A DNA stretch of 64,000 bases from Podarcis muralis (Eukaryota), in contig NC_135662.1 of NCBI RefSeq assembly GCF_964188315.1, positions 7,440,001 through 7,504,000 on the forward strand. Reading direction: 5' to 3'. A program made the translations under genes and the position numbers. Shown one piece after another: positions 4,077-61,209 of this stretch; the stretch's first letter is position 1; every line of letters starts with the position of its first letter. The notes under the pieces are model-generated. The model was not told the DNA's origin and did not search any database. It saw only the letters and a program-made list of their open reading frames with translations.

Positions 4077-4968
4077 TTAAGTTGCTATCATAACCGAGTT
4101 TTCAGTTTTGGATGCTGATTCTTCCTCATCCTTGAAAATCCTCTGGAGTGCAGCTTTCATGGAGACCCTGGACTGGCCCTTTTTCTGTCTCCTCCCAACT
4201 AGGAAATAGATCAGCGGGTTGACACTACTATTCAGAGAGGCACACACAAAACCAACTTCCAATAGAATCATATTCTTCTCATTAAAATAGATGGCAGTGT
4301 AAATGGCATTTAGTGGGAAAGCAAAGATGAGGAAGAAAAGAAGTGCAAGCAAAATGGTGGTGAGCAGCTTCCCGCGTTGATTCTGCTCTGATTTGCAACA
4401 GACTTTGAGGGCCAGTATCAGAGTGGAGGTGACCATCAGAGGAGTGCAAATGAGGGCGTTTACAATAAGCTGGTACACTAAGTTAGAGTCTGGAAAGCTC
4501 TGAGTCAGTAGGAGAGTAAGGTGAATGCCTGAGAGCAGGAAAGAGAGGGTCCATATCAGGGCACAGATAATGGTGGATAAACGTGCCGGCCGGTGGCATC
4601 GATGCCAAAGTGGGAAGAGGACAGCCACAGACCTGTCGATGCTGATGGCGGTCAGTAGAAACTGGCCCGCAGAATACGTGAAGAAAAATAGTTCAAATAA
4701 TACTTTTCTAATCAAAACAGCAACATGGGATTTCTCATAGAAAGTTACAACAGGCAAAATAATAGTCAGGAGAACTGTAAGGACACCAAAGTCAGCGATG
4801 GAGAGGTTCAGGATGTAGGTGGTGAAAGGATTCCTCTTAATGTGGAAGCCCAGAAGCCGGATGACCATTCCATTCCCCAGGAAGCCAAAGATGCAGATGA
4901 TGATAATTATGCTGTTGGCAATGCTTTGGATTACATTTCTATCACGTATTTCCTCAAAATATAATTCC
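4077..4968 (-). CDS. MAS/MRGPR-like GPCR 1, main coding exon (predicted 320 aa with exons 6597-6649 and 7627-7644)
   Basis: 7TM motifs FLGNG, KRNPFTTYILNLSIADF, AISIDRS, PLM, FPLN, NSSVNPLIYF. The frame is open upstream of the tracked ORF to the acceptor ccttttatctctttcag|G at 4969-4970. An in-frame TGA lies just upstream and there is no ATG before TM1. Confidence 0.9.
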
Positions 4969-5282
4969 CTGAAAGAGATAAAAGGATCTCAGTACCTGAT
5001 ATGATGTCTAGGTTCACCTTCATTAACTCTAAAGTCAGCATGACCCAATCAGTGATCAATCTAAGCAGCAAAGAGATAATACCACTTTCTTCTTGTCTAG
5101 ATCAATACCTGTGTAGCTATGGCAGTACACATTTTCCTGGAATCTTCAAAGTAAACGGTTTGGTAGCTTTTCCATTTTTACAACTATTGAGTAAATATTG
5201 ACACAAAGTAGGTGAAATGTTGAGGTTCAATAGCAAATTAGGAAATAGCTAACACTATTCTAGACTGCATCAACGGAAGTAT

Positions 5283-7310: not shown

Positions 7311-7626
7311 TATCTAGAAATACATATTTCTATTACACATTAGCTTTGCATGCTTACCCCCTTAACCTCATTTGGTTAATGGTTATGACAAGGTTGTTTG
7401 TTTGTTTTTACAATGTTTGGTAGTGGAAATAGCTGAAATGACCAGCCAGCCTATCTGTTTTCTCTTTTACAAGCTGCTATACATCTTAAATTCAATCTCA
7501 AGCCTAACTCATGAAAGCATGCAGAGAGAAATTGCCACAGTATCAGCAAACAGGCACCTAAATCAGCATCATGTAAAAGCAAATGGGGAAGAAATTAAAA
7601 GGGAGCTTTTGTTTAAGAGTGCTTAC

Positions 7627-7644
7627 CTCGTAATCATCCATCAT
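7627..7644 (-). CDS. Predicted first coding mini-exon of GPCR 1 (MMDDYE)
   Basis: Reads ATG ATG GAT GAT TAC GAG|gtaagc, a phase 0 donor conserved in the paralogous copy at 825-842. Confidence 0.6.
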
Positions 7645-8005
7645 GGGGTAGTTGATAAAATGTACTGGTCCCCCAAGAAACACAAGCTAGAGTTATAGCC
7701 GGAACAGCCGCTGATGAGCTAGTCAGCAACAAAAGTAAGCAGAAATCAAAAGAGGAAACTGAAGCACCAGAAGATTTTGAACTAGATCTGGATAACAAAC
7801 TTCATAGGAAGTAGGCGTTAGAAAAGGAAGAAAAGAGCAGACACAGAATTCAAACCAATGGAAATGGTAGCTAGATTGTTTTAGTGGCTAATTTGATTAG
7901 ATAATTCAGATTGAGTAAGCCTATATTTTTATTCACAAATGAATTTGAGGGATGTACAAGATGGTGCATAGTAAACAGTATGAATGGCCATTTGAAACAG
8001 ATCAA

Positions 8006-14792: not shown

Positions 14793-15020
14793 TCATAGAC
14801 TCATAGAACTGTAAAGTTGGAAGGTACCCCAAAGGTCATCTAGTCGAGCAGGAATCTCAACTAAAGCATGCATAACAGATGACTTTCCAACCTCTGCTTA
14901 AAAGCCTCCAATGAAGGGGAGTCCATAATCTCCTGAGGGAGTCTGTTCCACTGTCATACAGCTCTTAGTGTCAGAAAGTTATTTCTGATGTTAAGTCATA
15001 ATCCCCTTTCTTCCAACTTG
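14793..15020 (-). mobile_element. CR1 3' fragment
   Basis: Reverse complement of the CR1 3' end, with a tcatagactcatagaa tail. Confidence 0.8.
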
Positions 15021-15579
15021 GTTTTCCCAGATGTGGAATTGAATAATAGGTTAATGACTCACTTAGACCTAATTTTGGGAGGGGTCAAATTAATTTTGAC
15101 AAAACTAGTGAATTCTTTTTAGAAGTCTTTTTGGGAAGGTTTTTGCATTCGTTGAGGATGCCTCTGAATAGCTGTTTCTGGGAACCTCAAGTGAGGAGAG
15201 TGCTATTAATCTCTTTAATCACAGAGAGCCAGAACTTTTGTACTTTCCCACAATCCCACCAGAGATGTCTGTAAGCACCCATGAGCTGACATCCCCTCCA
15301 TGACGGTTGATATTGCTGTTTATAGAGGAACGCTTGAAACCAATAAGCATTAGATTGGGAAAGTGGGAATAATATTAATTGATTATATAAACTTCATGCA
15401 CTGGAGAAGCAAAGGTACAGAGAAGAGGAGTGTAAGGAAGATGGCTATGCTGGTTCACGATGAGAAGCTATTTTTTTTACCAACCCCATGGATAGAAGTG
15501 AGGCCTGCCTATAAAAATCCATTGGGAAATCTAAGATTTCACACAGTAGGAACCCTGCTAAGACACCACTCATAGGCGG

Positions 15580-16579
15580 TCAAATCATAACTTTGCTCTC
15601 TGTTCTGGATTTCTTGTCTTCTCTACAGTCTCCCACATCCTTAAACACCCTTGAGATTGCAGCTCTCATGGATACCCTGGAAGGACTCTTCCGTGCTCTC
15701 CTTCCAACTAAAAAATAAATGATTGGGTTGATGAGGCTGTTTACAGAAGAACACCCAAAGCCGATGAGCATGAGACTGTGAAGGTGGGGGAAATAATAGC
15801 AATAGATTACATAAACTGCATTCAGTGGGAAAGCAAAGATGAGAAAGAACAGGAGGGCAAGCAAGATAGCCGTGATGAGTTTTCCTTGCTGGCGTTGTTG
15901 TGCTTTACAGCAGACTTTGATGAACAGGGTCATAGAAGAGATGAACATCAGAGGCGTACAAAGCAGAGCATTTACAAGCAGCTGGTAGTGTAAAAGGGAC
16001 GCCCCAAATCTGCCAGTCATGCGGAGAGCGAAATGGATTGCAGAAAGCAGGAAGGAGAAGATCCATATTATAGCACATATGATGGCGGATGAGTTTGGTC
16101 CCCGGTCAAATCGATGCCAAAGTGGGAAGAGGACAACTACACACCTGTCAATGCTGATAGCTGCCAGTAGATACTGACTGGTAGAATATGTGAAGCAAAA
16201 GAGTTCAAAAAATAATAGAAAAACGCTGTTGAGAATGCGAGATTCACTCGTCACACGAAGGGCAGTAGCAAATGCAGCAGTACTGATTAGAGATACCAAA
16301 AGCCCCAAAATGCAAATAATGGCAATGAAGCTGTTGATTAAATACTTTGCTAATTTGGAGAAGACCAGATCATTTGATGCTACAAACTCGGCAAAAACAA
16401 TGCTGGAGGCAGCAGTTGTGCTATTATTTAAATTTCTAAATATGATACCCTCATTTGAGTTAAGATAATCAGGTATGTCTCCAGAACCACTGTAATCTTC
16501 TGTTATTGCTCGACCATCTGGTTGCTTGGCAATACCCTTTACATAAATTTTAACTTCGGTAATCCTTTCATGCCGATAC
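15580..16579 (-). CDS. MAS/MRGPR-like GPCR 2, main exon; long N-terminus and about 33-aa in-frame TM1-TM2 deletion (337 aa with exon 16751-16764); possibly a pseudogene
   Basis: Has AISIDRC, WHR, PLM, FPLN and NPIIYF motifs. The frame is open for 90 codons upstream of the tracked ORF to a strong acceptor ctcttgttctctttctttttgcag|G (16580-16581). It lacks GNG..KRNPFT..NLA.AD. Confidence 0.85.
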
Positions 16580-16750
16580 CTGCAAAAAGAAAGAGAACAA
16601 GAGTAAGCATTATTCTGCGGTCAATCAAATGATCTACACAACGGGTACACAAACCACACTACCTACAACCCTGACTCCTCATTTGTCAAAGTCATATTGA
16701 TTTGGGTGCGACTGGGACTGGGAGCAACTTCCACTGAGTGAGTCTCTTAC

Positions 16751-16764
16751 CTGATTCCCAACAT
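16751..16764 (-). CDS. Candidate start mini-exon of GPCR 2 (MLGIR)
   Basis: Reads gaaATG TTG GGA ATC AG|gtaaga, a phase 2 donor compatible with the acceptor at 16580 (171-nt intron). An in-frame TGA lies upstream. Confidence 0.5.
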
Positions 16765-16893
16765 TTCTTTCAAAAACTCTCAAGTCAATGGTGGCCATAT
16801 CCACACCATGCCTTTACATTGTTATGATAAACATTGATGGCCGCCCAAAGAATCCTGGGAGTTGCAGTTTGTTAAAGGCACTGAAAGTGCTTA

Positions 16894-17254
16894 AAGGTAA
16901 AGGTAAAGGTACCCCTGCCCGTACGGGCCAGTCTTGACAGACTCTAGGGTTGTGCGCTCATCTCACTCTAGAGGCCGGGAGCCAGCGCTGTCCGCAGACA
17001 CTTCCGGGTCACGTGGCCAGTGTGACAAGCTGCATCTGGTGAGCCAGCGCAGCACACGGAACGCCGTTTACCTTCCCGCTGGTAAGCGGTCCCTATTTAT
17101 CTACTTGCACCCGGGGGTGCTTTCGAACTGCTAGGTTGGCAGGCGCTGGGACTGAACGACGGGAGCGCACCCCGCCGTGGGGATTCAAACCACCGACCTT
17201 TCAATCAGCAAGCCCTAGGCGCTGAGGTTTTACCCATAGCGCCACCCGCGTCCC
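16894..17254 (-). mobile_element. Sauria SINE, full length
   Basis: 5' gggacgcgggtggcgc and an (ACCTTT)n tail. 12-bp TSD TGAAAGTGCTTA at 16882-16893 and 17255-17266. Confidence 0.9.
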
Positions 17255-17394
17255 TGAAAGTGCTTAGGCGTTCCTTATTCCCACCACAGTGCTATAATTC
17301 CAAGAGTTCCATGTGCAAAGAGATTGAGCGTTAATCCACCCTAAGATTAAAGTAGGACTGGGAGAACCATGCATGGCACCATGAGCTCATAATG

Positions 17395-17750: not shown

Positions 17751-18614
17751 CGTTCTCTTTAGAGAAAAAGGTGTGAGATAAATGTGATAAATAAACAAAA
17801 AACTATAAAATAAATCTGGAGGGTGGAATTCTGAAGGTCACATCCTCTTTTTAGTAACCTGACAGAGGCCGCATTCTCTGCCTTATTATTTTTTTTATTA
17901 TTGTATATAATAAATGTCCGTCACATCCAGTTCCCTTGTGATGTTAAAATGATGTATAGAATTTCCTTCCATTGTGGGATGCCTAAATAAAATAACTACT
18001 ATAAACTATGAGAATGGTTTCAAGTGTTGTAAATCAAAGTTATGACTTTATTAAAAAGTAGAAGAGATTGGCAGATGTTCACTAGAGCTGTGCACAACCA
18101 TCCGCCCCATGACATTGATCCAGGGGTTCCTGAATCAGGGCAGACCATGCTGGTTCAACCTGAAGATGAACTGCCCCACCCTGGACCCAATTCTGAAGTT
18201 TGGAGAAGGAGTTGGACACCACACTGGATGCAGAGAGGGACACCAGAAAAGCTCAGATGGATCACACAAGTGGCCCATCTAGTGCAGCATCATGTTCTCA
18301 CAGTGGCCAGCTAGATGCCTCTGGAATAGCCAGACGGAGAAGCTGAGCCCAAGAGCACCCTCTCAGATTGTGACTGCACCCACACAAGACACAAAGGATT
18401 GGGATTAAAATGACAACAGCCTTATTAAAGTCTACTTGAAGGGTCTACAAAGGACTAGAATTACGAAATCTTCAAAGCATTCCAGGCTCCTATAAATCTG
18501 AAACAGTGTAATCTATAGCTTAATCCTTGGATATGTGGGTGAGCTCCCTTGGCTCATGGCCTCAGAGTAGTTAACTCTCTAGCCAAGCTGTTGATGTCTA
18601 GCGATTTCTATCTA

Positions 18615-21469: not shown

Positions 21470-21938
21470 GTCATGGAGGCTGATGGAATCAATGCCAAAT
21501 TGGGAAGAGGACAGCAACACACCATTCAGTGCTGATGGCTGTCAGCAGAAATTGACGAGTGATGTACATGAGGAAAAAGTAAGAGGAAAGGAACCCTTGC
21601 AACAAATCAGAAGAGATATAAAAGCATACAAGGATGCCAAGCTCAGCCACAGCCAAATTCAGGATGAAGATGGTAAAACAATTCATTTTCATGCCAAAGC
21701 CGAGAAGCCAGATGACAGTTAGATCCCTCGTAAGTTCAAAAATGCTAATAACTGAAATAAAGGCAGGGATAATAAGGTATATGATATTCCATAATTAATA
21801 TGTTCATAGTTTGGGAGCCCACTTGCATTGTCTCCTTATCTTCCTCTACAGCATCCAAAAGGGACAAGGACTGAGGGCCATAATTTCTCCTCATGTTGAA
21901 TCTCTGCTTTTGAGCTGCTTCTTGTATGAATCCTCCTC
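21470..21938 (-). pseudogene. MRGPR-like pseudogene, 5' half only (N-terminus to ICL2)
   Basis: Acceptor cctag at 21939-21940 and ATG at 21894. MRRNYGPQSLSLLDAVE resembles gene 3. There are frameshifts, a CGA>TGA change after LFPIWH, and homology then ends. Confidence 0.9.
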
Positions 21939-59206: not shown

Positions 59207-61209
59207 TCACATCTGGCTTTGAACTGGAACTTCTCGTTCCTCTCTGCAGTTTTCCTCCTCTTTTAAAAGTCTCTGGAGTATGACCTTCATGCTCTCCCTG
59301 GATCGAGTCCTCTTGTTTCTCCCAATCAGGAAATAAATCAGTGGGTTAATACTGCTATTCAGGCAGCTGCATAATAACACAACAGATACTTTAAAAGATG
59401 AAACATCATAGTCCAAAGGTGGATTGAAAAAATAGATTAATGAAATGCAAGTAAATGGGAAAGCTAAGAAGAGGAAGAAGAGGAGGGCAAGGAGGATGGC
59501 TGTTAAAGCTTTTCCCTTCTTCCTGTGTTGTGATTGAAACCAAACTTTTATAAACAGGATCAGAGAGGTCGGCCCTAAAGGTGTTCAAGGCAAAAGTGGT
59601 TGCCGTGCTTGCTTATGCTGCCCCGCTCTGGGCCGTGATGACAGATCCTGCTCCTCTTGAGACTCTGCAAAACCAATTCCTACGTCGGCTCCTAATGCTC
59701 CCCCTGTGCGTAAGCAATGCAGCCATGCGACTAGAATTGAAGATCGCATCCTTAGAAACTTGCCTGTGGAAGCAAGTCTTCAATTATTGGTTATCATTGT
59801 GGCATAGATTACCAAACCATTACCTTGTCCAATGCTTATGGCGAGATGAATTCTCTAGCCTTTGGACTAGTAGAATTCATGCCAAACTCCTGAGTTATGG
59901 AATCTCTCCCTCAGATTCCCTAAAACTAGACCAAATCACTGCTCAAAGACTGATCCGTCAAAGACTGGATGGCATCGACTTACAGCGAAATTATACGCTG
60001 GGGGGAGGTGTTTGTTCGCCCCAGAACATTGGTGTCACTTTAACTTACTGCGTTCCATCATACCTCTCTTCCCTTTCGACTGTTGCCCATAGACTGGCCT
60101 TCACCAAAGCGAGGTTTAACGTTTTTCCCTCCAATGTCCTGAGACATAGATTCTCAAAGGGCCAAGCCCCCGCCATGTGCGAATGTGATAAGGAGACGCC
60201 GGAGTCGCTCCAGCACATTATGTTCACTTGCCCCTTGTTCAATGTGCCACGGGCAAATTTGTTGGGATCAATCATACAGAAACTAGAGGGTACCCCACCA
60301 AAATTCCACCTTGCCCAAATCTTGCAGGATAAGGATACCCATACGACCCTGAAAGTGGCTAGGTTCCTGGTCGCTGTCCTTACCCAAAAACGACGCCAAG
60401 GAGCACTACAAGCTAATTAAGGCGTAGTATGCCATTCCATCTTATAGTATTTTATTGTTATAGTGGTGTTTTAGCGGCTGTTTTTTTTCCCCACGTGCAC
60501 AAGCTGTTATTTATGTGTTGTTTTTACCTGTATGGGCCTATGGCCGTAATAAATAAATGATGATCAGAGAGGAGACAGTCATAAGTGGGAGGAAAAGAAC
60601 AGCATTTAACAGAAGCTGGTAGAAAAGGAGGTCCAGAAAAATATTAAAAATAAAAAGAATCAAGTTGATTACAGAGAACAGGAAAGAAATGATCCATATT
60701 GTGGCACACACAAAGGTGGAAAAGTGTGGTGGTCGGTGGCATCGATGCCAAAGGGGGAAAATGACAGAAACACACTTGTCCATGCTAATGGCCGTCAACA
60801 GGTATTGACCAGTGTTGTACATGAACAACAAGAAAAACTCAAACAACTGTACACACAAACTAATATCTACAGATAAGGATGAAAATGACACCACAAGATA
60901 CACAATCAAATAAGAAGATAAGCAAATGAGGGCCCCAAGGTCAGCAACAGCCAGATTTAGTATGAAAGTGGTGAAAGGATTCCTCTTCATGCAGAAACCA
61001 AGAAACCAGATGACAGTCCCATTCCCCATAAGTCCAAAAATGCTAATAACTAGAATTAAGAAATATAGAATAATGCCTGCTATACGATATGTTGATAATT
61101 CATGATCAAAACCGTCCTGGGGGGTTAGGATGTCAGTTCCATTTTCTGCTCCAATATGTTCCCATGAAGCATTCAAAGAGGACCAGGATCCCAGGCCCTC
61201 ATTCCTCAT
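59207..61209 (-). pseudogene. MAS/MRGPR-like GPCR 7, split in TM5 by a LINE
   Basis: 5' half at 60562-61209 and 3' half at 59207-59568. Removing the insert and one TSD gives an uninterrupted frame (..LMTVSSLILFIKVWF..VPVQSQM*). Confidence 0.95.
59569..60561 (+). mobile_element. 5'-truncated non-LTR retrotransposon (RT thumb plus C-terminal CxC-x8-H-x4-C; RTE-X-like, clade uncertain)
   Basis: 279-aa uninterrupted ORF with AVLAYAAPLW..QNQFLRRLL and CECDKETPESLQHIMFTC. Tail aataaataaatgatgat; 11-bp TSD GATCAGAGAGG at 59558-59568 and 60562-60572. Confidence 0.9.

What the first reader, a model, noticed from the sequence alone, without database searches (positions are those of the whole stretch)
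16280..16330. MRGPR with an in-frame 33-aa deletion fusing TM1 to TM2: possible 6-TM receptor
GPCR 2 reads FIAIICILG|LLVSLISTAAF. Paralogues have IICIFG-[FLGNGMVIRLLGFHIKRNPFTTYILNLSIADFG]-VLTVLL, so about 33 codons (inner half of TM1, ICL1, inner half of TM2, including N1.50 and D2.50) are gone. The likely route is repair between the two tttgg/FG microhomologies. The rest of the frame is unbroken through TM7 and the C-tail, with DRC and NPIIY kept. The fused hydrophobic stretch of about 28 residues could act as TM2 with a cytosolic N-terminus, form a re-entrant loop, or misfold. It may be a non-canonical or decoy receptor, or a young pseudogene.
Basis: partly seen in the sequence, partly recalled or inferred. 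Interest (0 to 1): 0.8.

Follow-up and report, generated by a model that had tools for sequence, protein, structure and literature searches.

The report
Segregating 99-bp deletion in decaying lizard MRGPR
One copy of a wall-lizard itch-receptor-family (MRGPR) gene really does lack 33 codons, but the sequenced animal also carries the undeleted version, and with a ruined splice site and neutral-looking evolution this looks like an ordinary gene dying in the population, not a new six-helix receptor.

Summary
The MRGPRH-like gene at window 15580-16579 (-) belongs to Podarcis muralis (RefSeq XP_077789737.1). It lacks exactly 99 nt (junction 16295|16296) that five window paralogues and the positional orthologues of P. 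lilfordi and Lacerta agilis keep. The lost piece is the inner half of TM1, ICL1 and the inner half of TM2, including N1.50 and D2.50.

It is not an assembly error, and it is not fixed.
- In the run that matches the window (X1), a contig without the 99 nt (depth 25.8) and one with 99 extra letters (depth 18.5) form a heterozygous bubble.
- An independent DNA run carries the deletion on a haplotype 2% diverged from the window.
- An RNA-library run carries the 99 letters.

- The exon has no start codon. The ancestral exon 1 (17913-17972) has lost its GT splice donor, and RefSeq rescues the frame with a cryptic 14-nt intronic mini-exon.
- The P. muralis lineage shows about 10-12 nonsynonymous to 2-3 synonymous changes (omega about 1), against 6:10 in P. 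lilfordi.
- AlphaFold2 confidence falls from pTM 0.77 for the intact orthologue to 0.36.

The proposed microhomology is not supported.

Best reading: a segregating loss-of-function allele of a decaying gene. A working 6-TM receptor is unlikely.

The parts
15580..16579 (-). Coding exon 2 of the MRGPRH-like gene (RefSeq XP_077789737.1 'proto-oncogene Mas-like'), stop codon at 15580-15582. It is open throughout but has no in-frame ATG upstream of the TM region.
   Evidence: translation. P0001 is 100% identical; the NCBI gene spans 1185 nt, equal to window 15580-16764.
16295..16296 (-). Junction of the 99-nt in-frame deletion. The orthologues carry 99 nt between these two bases.
   Evidence: A3 and A1; joint at 16295|16296 with 99 letters between in X1 and X4 (arithmetic from table 8), and no insert in X17.
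16252..16356 (-). Single fused hydrophobic stretch (P0001 residues about 80-114), made of the outer half of TM1 plus the outer half of TM2.
   Evidence: one hydrophobic segment here, against two in the intact P0121; one long helix 62-114 at low confidence.
16580..16581 (-). AG splice acceptor of exon 2, conserved in P. lilfordi and L. agilis.
   Evidence: (intron alignment).
16751..16764 (-). 14-nt mini-exon (ATG TTG GGA ATC AG, followed by GTAAGA) used by RefSeq to supply 'MLGI'. The same sequence lies inside the ancestral intron of both outgroups, so it is a cryptic start plus donor and not the ancestral start.
   Evidence: the P0001 N-terminus; conserved in L002 and L001; gene span.
16893..17265 (.). 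373-nt interspersed-repeat (SINE-like) insertion in the intron, flanked by an 11-nt target-site duplication GAAAGTGCTTA. It is absent from P. lilfordi and L. agilis at this site.
   Evidence: gap in both outgroups; other copies at 72-77% identity in the window and in L002, plus the TSD. ARAGORN calls no tRNA.
17913..17972 (-). Relic of the ancestral coding exon 1 (MEGNSIHHFNITRELDVTDI...), with the ATG at 17970-17972.
   Evidence: tblastn gives 91% identity to residues 1-22 of P0121 and P0122..
17906..17913 (-). Destroyed exon-1 splice donor. The orthologues have ...CATCTG|GTAAGTAT; the window has ...CATTT----ATTAT (4 nt lost plus substitutions, no GT). Read-through hits TAA at 17898-17900.
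   Evidence: A4.

Best explanation
This is the Podarcis muralis positional orthologue of a lacertid MRGPRH-like (MAS/MRGPR-family) class A GPCR gene with two coding exons. In the assembled haplotype it carries a genuine 99-nt in-frame deletion. The joining was blunt, with no microhomology. The deletion removes the cytoplasmic halves of TM1 and TM2, ICL1, N1.50 and D2.50.

The deletion is a segregating allele, not a fixed feature. The sequenced animal is heterozygous, and both forms occur on different haplotype backgrounds, which implies recombination or gene conversion around the indel.

The same haplotype has also lost the splice donor of the exon that supplies the start codon. Coding changes at the locus have accumulated at a neutral rate.

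The most likely mechanism is therefore loss of function. The allele either makes no properly initiated mRNA, or makes a polypeptide that cannot form the 7TM bundle and is retained or degraded. In short, it is a segregating pseudogene in a birth-and-death receptor cluster.

Shown here: the deletion, its borders, its polymorphism, the donor loss, the N:S excess and the drop in fold confidence. Inferred: that no functional protein results.
For: 1. Orthology and identity. P0001 is 100% identical to the window. L. agilis XP_033012038 (81%) and P. lilfordi CAI5778950 are full length. The chromosomal position matches, 7.44-7.47 Mb in P. muralis against 7.43-7.46 Mb in P. lilfordi. A GPCR1-type gene lies downstream in L. 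agilis, as it does in the window.

2. Exact 99-nt gap with no junction homology.

3. Polymorphism.
- In X1 the two contigs are identical to the window for 695 nt on one side and at least 575 nt on the other. The two branch depths (25.8 for the deletion form, 18.5 for the form with 99 letters) sum to the flank depth of about 42.
- X17 has a 1175-nt contig that spans the junction without the insert, with 24 differences from the window.
- X4 has a 1432-nt contig with the 99 letters.
- The +99 form always comes with 16225A and 16256T.
- All four combinations of the indel with site 16152, and with site 16449, are seen.

4. Exon-1 donor lost compared with two outgroups. The RefSeq start lies in a cryptic intronic mini-exon that is also present in the outgroups.

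5. Relaxed constraint.
- The P. muralis branch has about 10-12 nonsynonymous and 2-3 synonymous changes. The P. lilfordi branch has 6 and 10. Fisher p is 0.02-0.04.
- Window against X17 within the CDS gives 14 N: 3 S. CDS divergence is 1.9%, against 2.4% in the intron.
- The X17/X19 haplotype has W4.50R at an invariant column. The window has Leu at a position where at least 90% of homologues have Ser.

6. Structure prediction with the same 70-sequence alignment. The deletion allele gives pLDDT 61.3 and pTM 0.36, with the TM core at 59-73. The intact orthologue gives 77.7 and 0.77, with the core at 85-97.

7. 20 of the 33 deleted columns are at least 90% conserved in 69 squamate homologues.
Against: - The frame stays open for 333 codons after the deletion, and DRC, W4.50 and NPIIY are kept in this haplotype.
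- RefSeq models it as protein-coding without a low-quality flag.
- RNA-library runs from two studies hold 20-66% of the CDS words. In X19 the contigs lie only inside exon 2, so some transcription is likely.
- The deletion sits on two haplotypes 2% apart. That could also fit a long-maintained (balanced) polymorphism.
- Substitution counts are small. Four 'P. lilfordi-branch' states are shared with the X17 haplotype, so lineage sorting or gene conversion blurs the branch assignment.
- MRGPR genes are known from the literature to evolve fast, so an omega near 1 alone does not prove decay.
- Whether the donor lesion is also present on the undeleted haplotype was not tested.
Confidence: 0.75

Rival explanations
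1. The deletion allele encodes a working non-canonical 6-TM protein. The fused TM1/TM2 helix would act as 'TM2' with a cytosolic N-terminus. The protein would serve as a decoy or dominant-negative partner of the intact allele or neighbouring MRGPRs, as described for some truncated GPCR splice variants.
For: - Exon 2 is an open frame with DRC and NPIIY kept.
- The charge distribution of the TM3-TM7 loops favours keeping their native orientation, which would put the N-terminus inside the cell.
- RNA libraries contain the locus.
- There is precedent: NMUR2S is a surface-expressed 6-TM variant that damps signalling (PMC4552561); 6TM mu-opioid receptors exist (PMC4676002); truncated GPCRs often act as dominant negatives by ER retention (PMC3477067).
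- The deletion is found on two diverged haplotypes.
Against: - There is no ancestral start. The exon-1 donor is destroyed and only a cryptic mini-exon gives an ATG.
- N1.50 and D2.50 are lost, as are 20 columns that are at least 90% conserved.
- AlphaFold2 confidence collapses compared with the matched control.
- Omega is about 1, with damaging changes such as W4.50R on a deletion haplotype.
- The deletion is absent from P. lilfordi, L. agilis and some P. muralis haplotypes, so it is not a conserved isoform.
- The known 6-TM variants arise by regulated splicing and keep a whole TM2.
Confidence: 0.07
2. The gene is still a functional receptor in P. muralis through its undeleted haplotypes. The deletion is then simply a recent null allele of a live gene, and the locus as a whole is not decaying.
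For: - Undeleted alleles exist in X1 and X4.
- The X4 haplotype keeps several ancestral residues: W7, A33 and S at the NSSINP site.
- The older RefSeq model XP_028594320.1 (P0122) has the 33 residues and a properly spliced exon 1.
- P. lilfordi shows purifying selection, 6 N: 10 S.
Against: - The X4-type haplotype still shares about 7 derived nonsynonymous and 2-3 synonymous changes with the window (incomplete list).
- P0122 is flagged LOW QUALITY, has Ile at N1.50 and lacks 33 N-terminal residues.
- It is unknown whether undeleted haplotypes keep the exon-1 donor.
Confidence: 0.15
3. Assembly artefact: the 99 nt were dropped by the assembler and the animal has only the intact form.
For: Contigs carrying 99 extra letters exist in the best-matching run X1.
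Against: - X1 also has a deletion contig at the higher depth (25.8 against 18.5).
- The independent 2019 DNA run X17 spans the junction without the insert in a 1175-nt contig.
Confidence: 0.02

Closest known systems
Segregating pseudogenes of chemosensory GPCR multigene families (for example human olfactory receptors; PMC2043052, PMC3462693)
   Same: It is a member of a tandem, birth-and-death GPCR cluster. Intact and disrupted alleles coexist in the population. Coding changes accumulate at a neutral-looking rate. Neighbouring copies in the same window are fragments or interrupted genes.
   Different: The disrupting lesion is an in-frame 99-nt deletion combined with loss of a splice donor, not a stop or frameshift, so annotation pipelines still call it protein-coding. 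The family is MAS/MRGPR in a lizard, and its ligands and expression sites are unknown.
MAS1 / MRGPR subfamily of class A GPCRs (nearest solved structures: human MAS1, MRGPRD, MRGPRX4, MRGPRE, MRGPRX1 and MRGPRX2)
   Same: For the intact orthologue the best PDB sequence matches are MAS1 (2e-42) and MRGPRD. All database relatives are named MRGPRH-like or Mas-like. Pfam 7tm_1 is above its cut-off.
   Different: The window allele lacks the inner TM1, ICL1 and inner TM2, and so has six rather than seven hydrophobic spans. The lacertid gene also has an N-terminal extension of about 100 aa encoded partly by a separate exon.
Truncated 6-TM GPCR isoforms (6TM mu-opioid receptor, NMUR2S; review PMC3477067)
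   Same: It would have six membrane spans. A modulatory or dominant-negative role through dimerisation or ER retention is conceivable.
   Different: Those isoforms come from regulated alternative splicing of an intact gene and are conserved between species. This one is a germline deletion allele, private to part of one species, lacking D2.50 and a normal start.

Membership tests
Class A (rhodopsin-like) GPCR, Pfam 7tm_1 | Profile match above the curated cut-off | tested here: met
   41.5 bits against a cut-off of 30.5, covering profile positions 16-260. The intact orthologue P0121 scores 57.8 bits over positions 1-260.
Class A (rhodopsin-like) GPCR, Pfam 7tm_1 | Seven transmembrane helices | tested here: not met
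   There is one fused hydrophobic span where P0121 has TM1 and TM2. 33 residues are missing compared with all paralogues and orthologues. The AlphaFold2 model has low confidence, pTM 0.36.
Class A (rhodopsin-like) GPCR, Pfam 7tm_1 | Conserved N1.50 (GNG) and D2.50 (LSIAD) | tested here: not met
   Both lie inside the deleted 99 nt. Their position was checked against the human MAS1 alignment.
Class A (rhodopsin-like) GPCR, Pfam 7tm_1 | E/DRY-type motif, W4.50 and NPxxY | tested here: met
   DRC, W177 and NPIIY are present in the window allele. W177 is Arg in the X17/X19 haplotype.
MAS/MRGPR subfamily | Closest relatives and nearest solved structures are MAS1/MRGPR; position in the MRGPR tandem cluster | tested here: met
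   all hits are Mas-like or MRGPRH-like; MAS1 2e-42, MRGPRD 1.7e-37; eight MRGPR copies or fragments in the window.
Segregating pseudogene | Both disrupted and undisrupted alleles present in the species | tested here: met
   X1 carries both forms (depths 25.8 and 18.5), X17 has the deletion, X4 has the 99 letters.
Segregating pseudogene | Relaxed selective constraint on the disrupted lineage | tested here: met
   about 10-12 N to 2-3 S against 6 N to 10 S in P. lilfordi, Fisher p 0.02-0.04; 14 N to 3 S between haplotypes, with CDS divergence about equal to intron divergence. The counts are small.
Segregating pseudogene | The disrupted allele gives no functional product | not testable with these tools
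   Only indirect evidence is available: loss of the exon-1 donor, loss of conserved motifs and the drop in fold confidence.
Functional 6-TM GPCR isoforms | Produced by regulated splicing and conserved across species | tested here: not met
   This is a genomic deletion. It is absent in P. lilfordi, L. agilis and some P. muralis haplotypes.
Functional 6-TM GPCR isoforms | Expressed as a mature mRNA or protein | tested here: inconclusive
   RNA-library runs hold the locus. The X19 contigs lie only within exon 2. The X4 contig runs unspliced through the intron and flanks at even depth, so it may be DNA or pre-mRNA. No splice joint was seen.

The most novel reading that the evidence does not exclude
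The deletion allele is translated from the cryptic mini-exon start into a stable 6-TM protein with a cytosolic N-terminus. This protein dimerises with intact MRGPRs of the cluster and tunes their trafficking or signalling. Both alleles are kept by balancing selection, which would explain why each form sits on more than one diverged haplotype.
Probability: 0.05. Interest if true: 0.6.

Novelty: new member of a known kind. Interest (0 to 1): 0.27.

Why it matters
The main value is as a caution and a small population-genetic case. A reference annotation lists as a normal 'proto-oncogene Mas-like' protein what is in fact one allele of a heterozygous 99-bp deletion, rescued with a cryptic start exon. 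Counts of 'intact' MRGPR genes in squamates taken from such annotations will be inflated.

It also gives a ready PCR-sized marker (a 99-bp length difference). That marker could be used to study gene death, gene conversion and haplotype structure in a lizard receptor cluster.

If the unlikely 6-TM reading held, it would be a natural germline example of a truncated modulatory GPCR.

Tried and rejected
- Microhomology-mediated deletion. The orthologue DNA shows no shared base at either breakpoint. The nearby CTTTT repeats would predict a different junction.
- Assembly error. Rejected on the X1 and X17 contigs.
- P0122 and P0003 as a source for the pre-deletion allele. P0003's N-terminal part matches the window fragment at 21.5 kb only at 68%, so it comes from a paralogous block. 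Whether P0122 is an allele or a paralogue could not be settled, because no DNA is on record for it.
- ARAGORN on the intron insertion found no tRNA. It is called an interspersed repeat only on the basis of its other copies and its target-site duplication.
- Literature searches for squamate MRGPR evolution returned nothing specific.
- A look-up of earlier scan notes by sequence returned nothing.
- The Kyte-Doolittle scan is crude: TM3 and TM7 fall below its threshold in both proteins. It was used only for the TM1/TM2 comparison.

Full report
**What is there**

The window is a tandem cluster of MAS/MRGPR-type class A GPCR genes on the minus strand. A tblastn search with one full copy finds eight copies or fragments.

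The copy in question has its main coding exon at 15580-16579 (-). Its translation is 100% identical to RefSeq XP_077789737.1, 'proto-oncogene Mas-like' of Podarcis muralis (P0001). That protein is encoded on assembly GCA_964188315.1, record OZ076961.1, at 7.45-7.47 Mb.

The closest relatives are MRGPRH-like proteins:
- Lacerta agilis XP_033012038 (P0002, 385 aa).
- P. lilfordi CAI5778950 (P0121, 386 aa), which lies at the matching chromosomal position, 7.43-7.46 Mb.

In L. agilis the next gene downstream is of the same type as the window's next gene. These are therefore positional orthologues.

For the intact orthologue, the nearest solved structures by sequence are human MAS1 (2e-42) and MRGPRD.

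**The observation**

The reading ...IICILGLLVSLISTAAF... is correct. All five full paralogues in the window (A1) and both orthologues (A2) have 33 more residues here.

The DNA alignment (A3) fixes the event:
- 99 nt are missing between window bases 16296 and 16295.
- The cut falls after the first base of a Gly codon and before the last two bases of a Leu codon, which makes a new Val codon.
- The lost segment holds GNG (N1.50), the KRN.FTT loop and LSIAD (D2.50). These positions were checked against the MAS1 alignment.
- 20 of the deleted columns are at least 90% conserved among 69 squamate homologues.

The breakpoints in the orthologues read ...CTTTTGG|GTAAT and CCTTT|TATCTC.

**Real, but polymorphic**

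Logan contigs of four runs were laid on 14900-16870.

- **X1** holds 99% of the locus words and is otherwise identical to the window, so it is probably the assembled animal.
  - It shows a clean two-branch bubble.
  - One branch is a 131-nt contig without the insert, at depth 25.8.
  - The other is a 230-nt contig at depth 18.5. It matches 101 letters up to 16295 and 30 letters from 16296, which leaves 99 letters between.
  - The two depths sum to the flank depth of about 42.
  - The flanks are single contigs of 695 nt and at least 575 nt.
  - This is heterozygosity, not a diverged paralogue.
- **X17**, an independent 2019 DNA run, spans the junction without the insert in a 1175-nt contig that differs from the window at 24 sites (2%).
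- **X4**, an RNA-library run, has a 1432-nt contig with 99 letters at the junction.
- **X19** has a 323-nt contig with 49 letters at the junction. I could not read them, and this remains unexplained.

The +99 form always comes with 16225A and 16256T. With sites 16152 and 16449, all four indel/SNP combinations occur. The indel has therefore been moved between haplotypes by recombination or a short gene-conversion tract, or it has recurred.

Exon 2 has no in-frame ATG before TM1. The orthologues show that the gene has two coding exons.

The homologue of exon 1 is at 17913-17972 (-) and keeps its ATG. Its donor site does not survive. Both outgroups have ...CATCTG|GTAAGTAT, while the window has ...CATTT----ATTAT with no GT, and read-through stops after five codons (A4).

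RefSeq instead starts the protein ('MLGI') in a 14-nt mini-exon at 16751-16764. The same ATG-plus-GTAAGA sequence lies inside the intron of both outgroups. It is therefore a cryptic site used to rescue the frame, not the ancestral start.

The intron also holds a 373-nt interspersed repeat with an 11-nt target-site duplication. The outgroups lack it at this site.

**Constraint**

Changes were assigned by parsimony on the three-species codon alignment.
- The P. muralis branch carries about 10-12 nonsynonymous and 2-3 synonymous changes once the junction codons are set aside.
- The P. lilfordi branch carries 6 and 10.
- With about 767 nonsynonymous and 229 synonymous sites, this gives omega of about 1.3 against about 0.18. 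Fisher p is 0.02-0.04.

Between the window and the X17 haplotype, the CDS has 14 nonsynonymous and 3 synonymous differences. CDS divergence is 1.9%, against 2.4% in the intron.

Two changes stand out:
- The X17/X19 haplotype has Arg at the invariant W4.50.
- The window has Leu where at least 90% of homologues have Ser, just before NPxxY.

Caveats: the counts are small. Four states assigned to the P. lilfordi branch are shared with X17, and removing them still gives p = 0.036.

**Fold**

Both proteins were folded with the same 70-sequence alignment.

| Protein | Mean pLDDT | pTM | TM core pLDDT |
|---|---|---|---|
| Deletion allele | 61.3 | 0.36 | 59-73 |
| Intact P. lilfordi orthologue | 77.7 | 0.77 | 85-97 |

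A hydropathy scan finds one hydrophobic span where the orthologue has two. The positive charges in the ICL2, ICL3 and C-tail equivalents would favour keeping TM3-TM7 in their native orientation. If a protein were made, its N-terminus of about 80 aa would then most likely stay in the cytosol. This is inference.

**Transcription**

RNA-library runs of two studies hold 20-66% of the CDS words.
- In X19 the three contigs lie only inside exon 2, which hints at an mRNA.
- In X4 the contig runs through the intron and flanks at even depth, so it may be DNA or unspliced RNA.
- No splice joint was seen.

Expression of a mature mRNA is therefore open.

**Conclusion**

The deletion is real and in frame. 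It is one allele of a polymorphism in a gene that has also lost its normal start-exon splice site and is evolving neutrally.

This fits a segregating pseudogene in a birth-and-death receptor cluster, as is well described for olfactory receptors (PMC2043052, PMC3462693).

Functional 6-TM GPCRs do exist (PMC4552561, PMC4676002), and truncated GPCRs can act as dominant negatives (PMC3477067). Those arise by regulated, conserved splicing and keep TM2 whole. That reading is not excluded here, but I put it at about 5-7%.

Noticed in passing
window 16295|16296, run X19 (record 23): A 323-nt contig from an RNA-library run has 49 letters, not 0 or 99, at the deletion junction. It sits on the X17-type haplotype. 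This could be a third length allele (it would shift the frame) or filler DNA. The letters were not shown.
   Followed up: no
window 21474-21788 (-): MRGPR fragment covering TM1-TM3 only, with an in-frame stop (...PIWH*FHQPP) and degraded motifs (ELTRD in place of GNG). It is a dead copy between two full genes. Ensembl's P. muralis model A0A670IG47 joins a paralogous copy of such a fragment to the 3' half of a gene like this one.
   Followed up: partly
window 59210-61209 (-): An MRGPR gene split after TM5 (...LIIIYLLRP*) by about 950 nt that carry a 279-aa ORF on the opposite strand (59581-60420). The 3' part resumes at 59566. It looks like a mobile-element insertion that killed the gene.
   Followed up: no
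window 15306-15413 (-); L002 12226-12360: A short TM7-like relic (about 56% identity to residues 300-338 of the orthologue) lies just downstream of the stop codon. The same relic is present in P. lilfordi, so it predates the species split.
   Followed up: no
window 4077-4988 (-): The neighbouring 'GPCR 1' also has no ATG before TM1 in its main exon, and a stop 40 codons upstream of its first Met. Matches to the N-terminal MDYPMMDDYE exon of its relatives lie at 7603-7656 and 801-854, so it too has upstream coding exon(s).
   Followed up: partly
window 14900-16870, runs X17 and X4 against the window: Haplotypes at this locus differ by 2-3% within the species (24 differences in 1175 nt; 17 in 512 nt of intergenic DNA). 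This seems high for within-species variation and may reflect deep lineages or exchange among paralogues.
   Followed up: no
window 15400-15559, run X1: The window-type contig here has depth 25.9, against about 41 in the flanks. X17 has an extra A after 15478. This is probably a second heterozygous site on the same haplotype, whose other form was too different to be laid.
   Followed up: no
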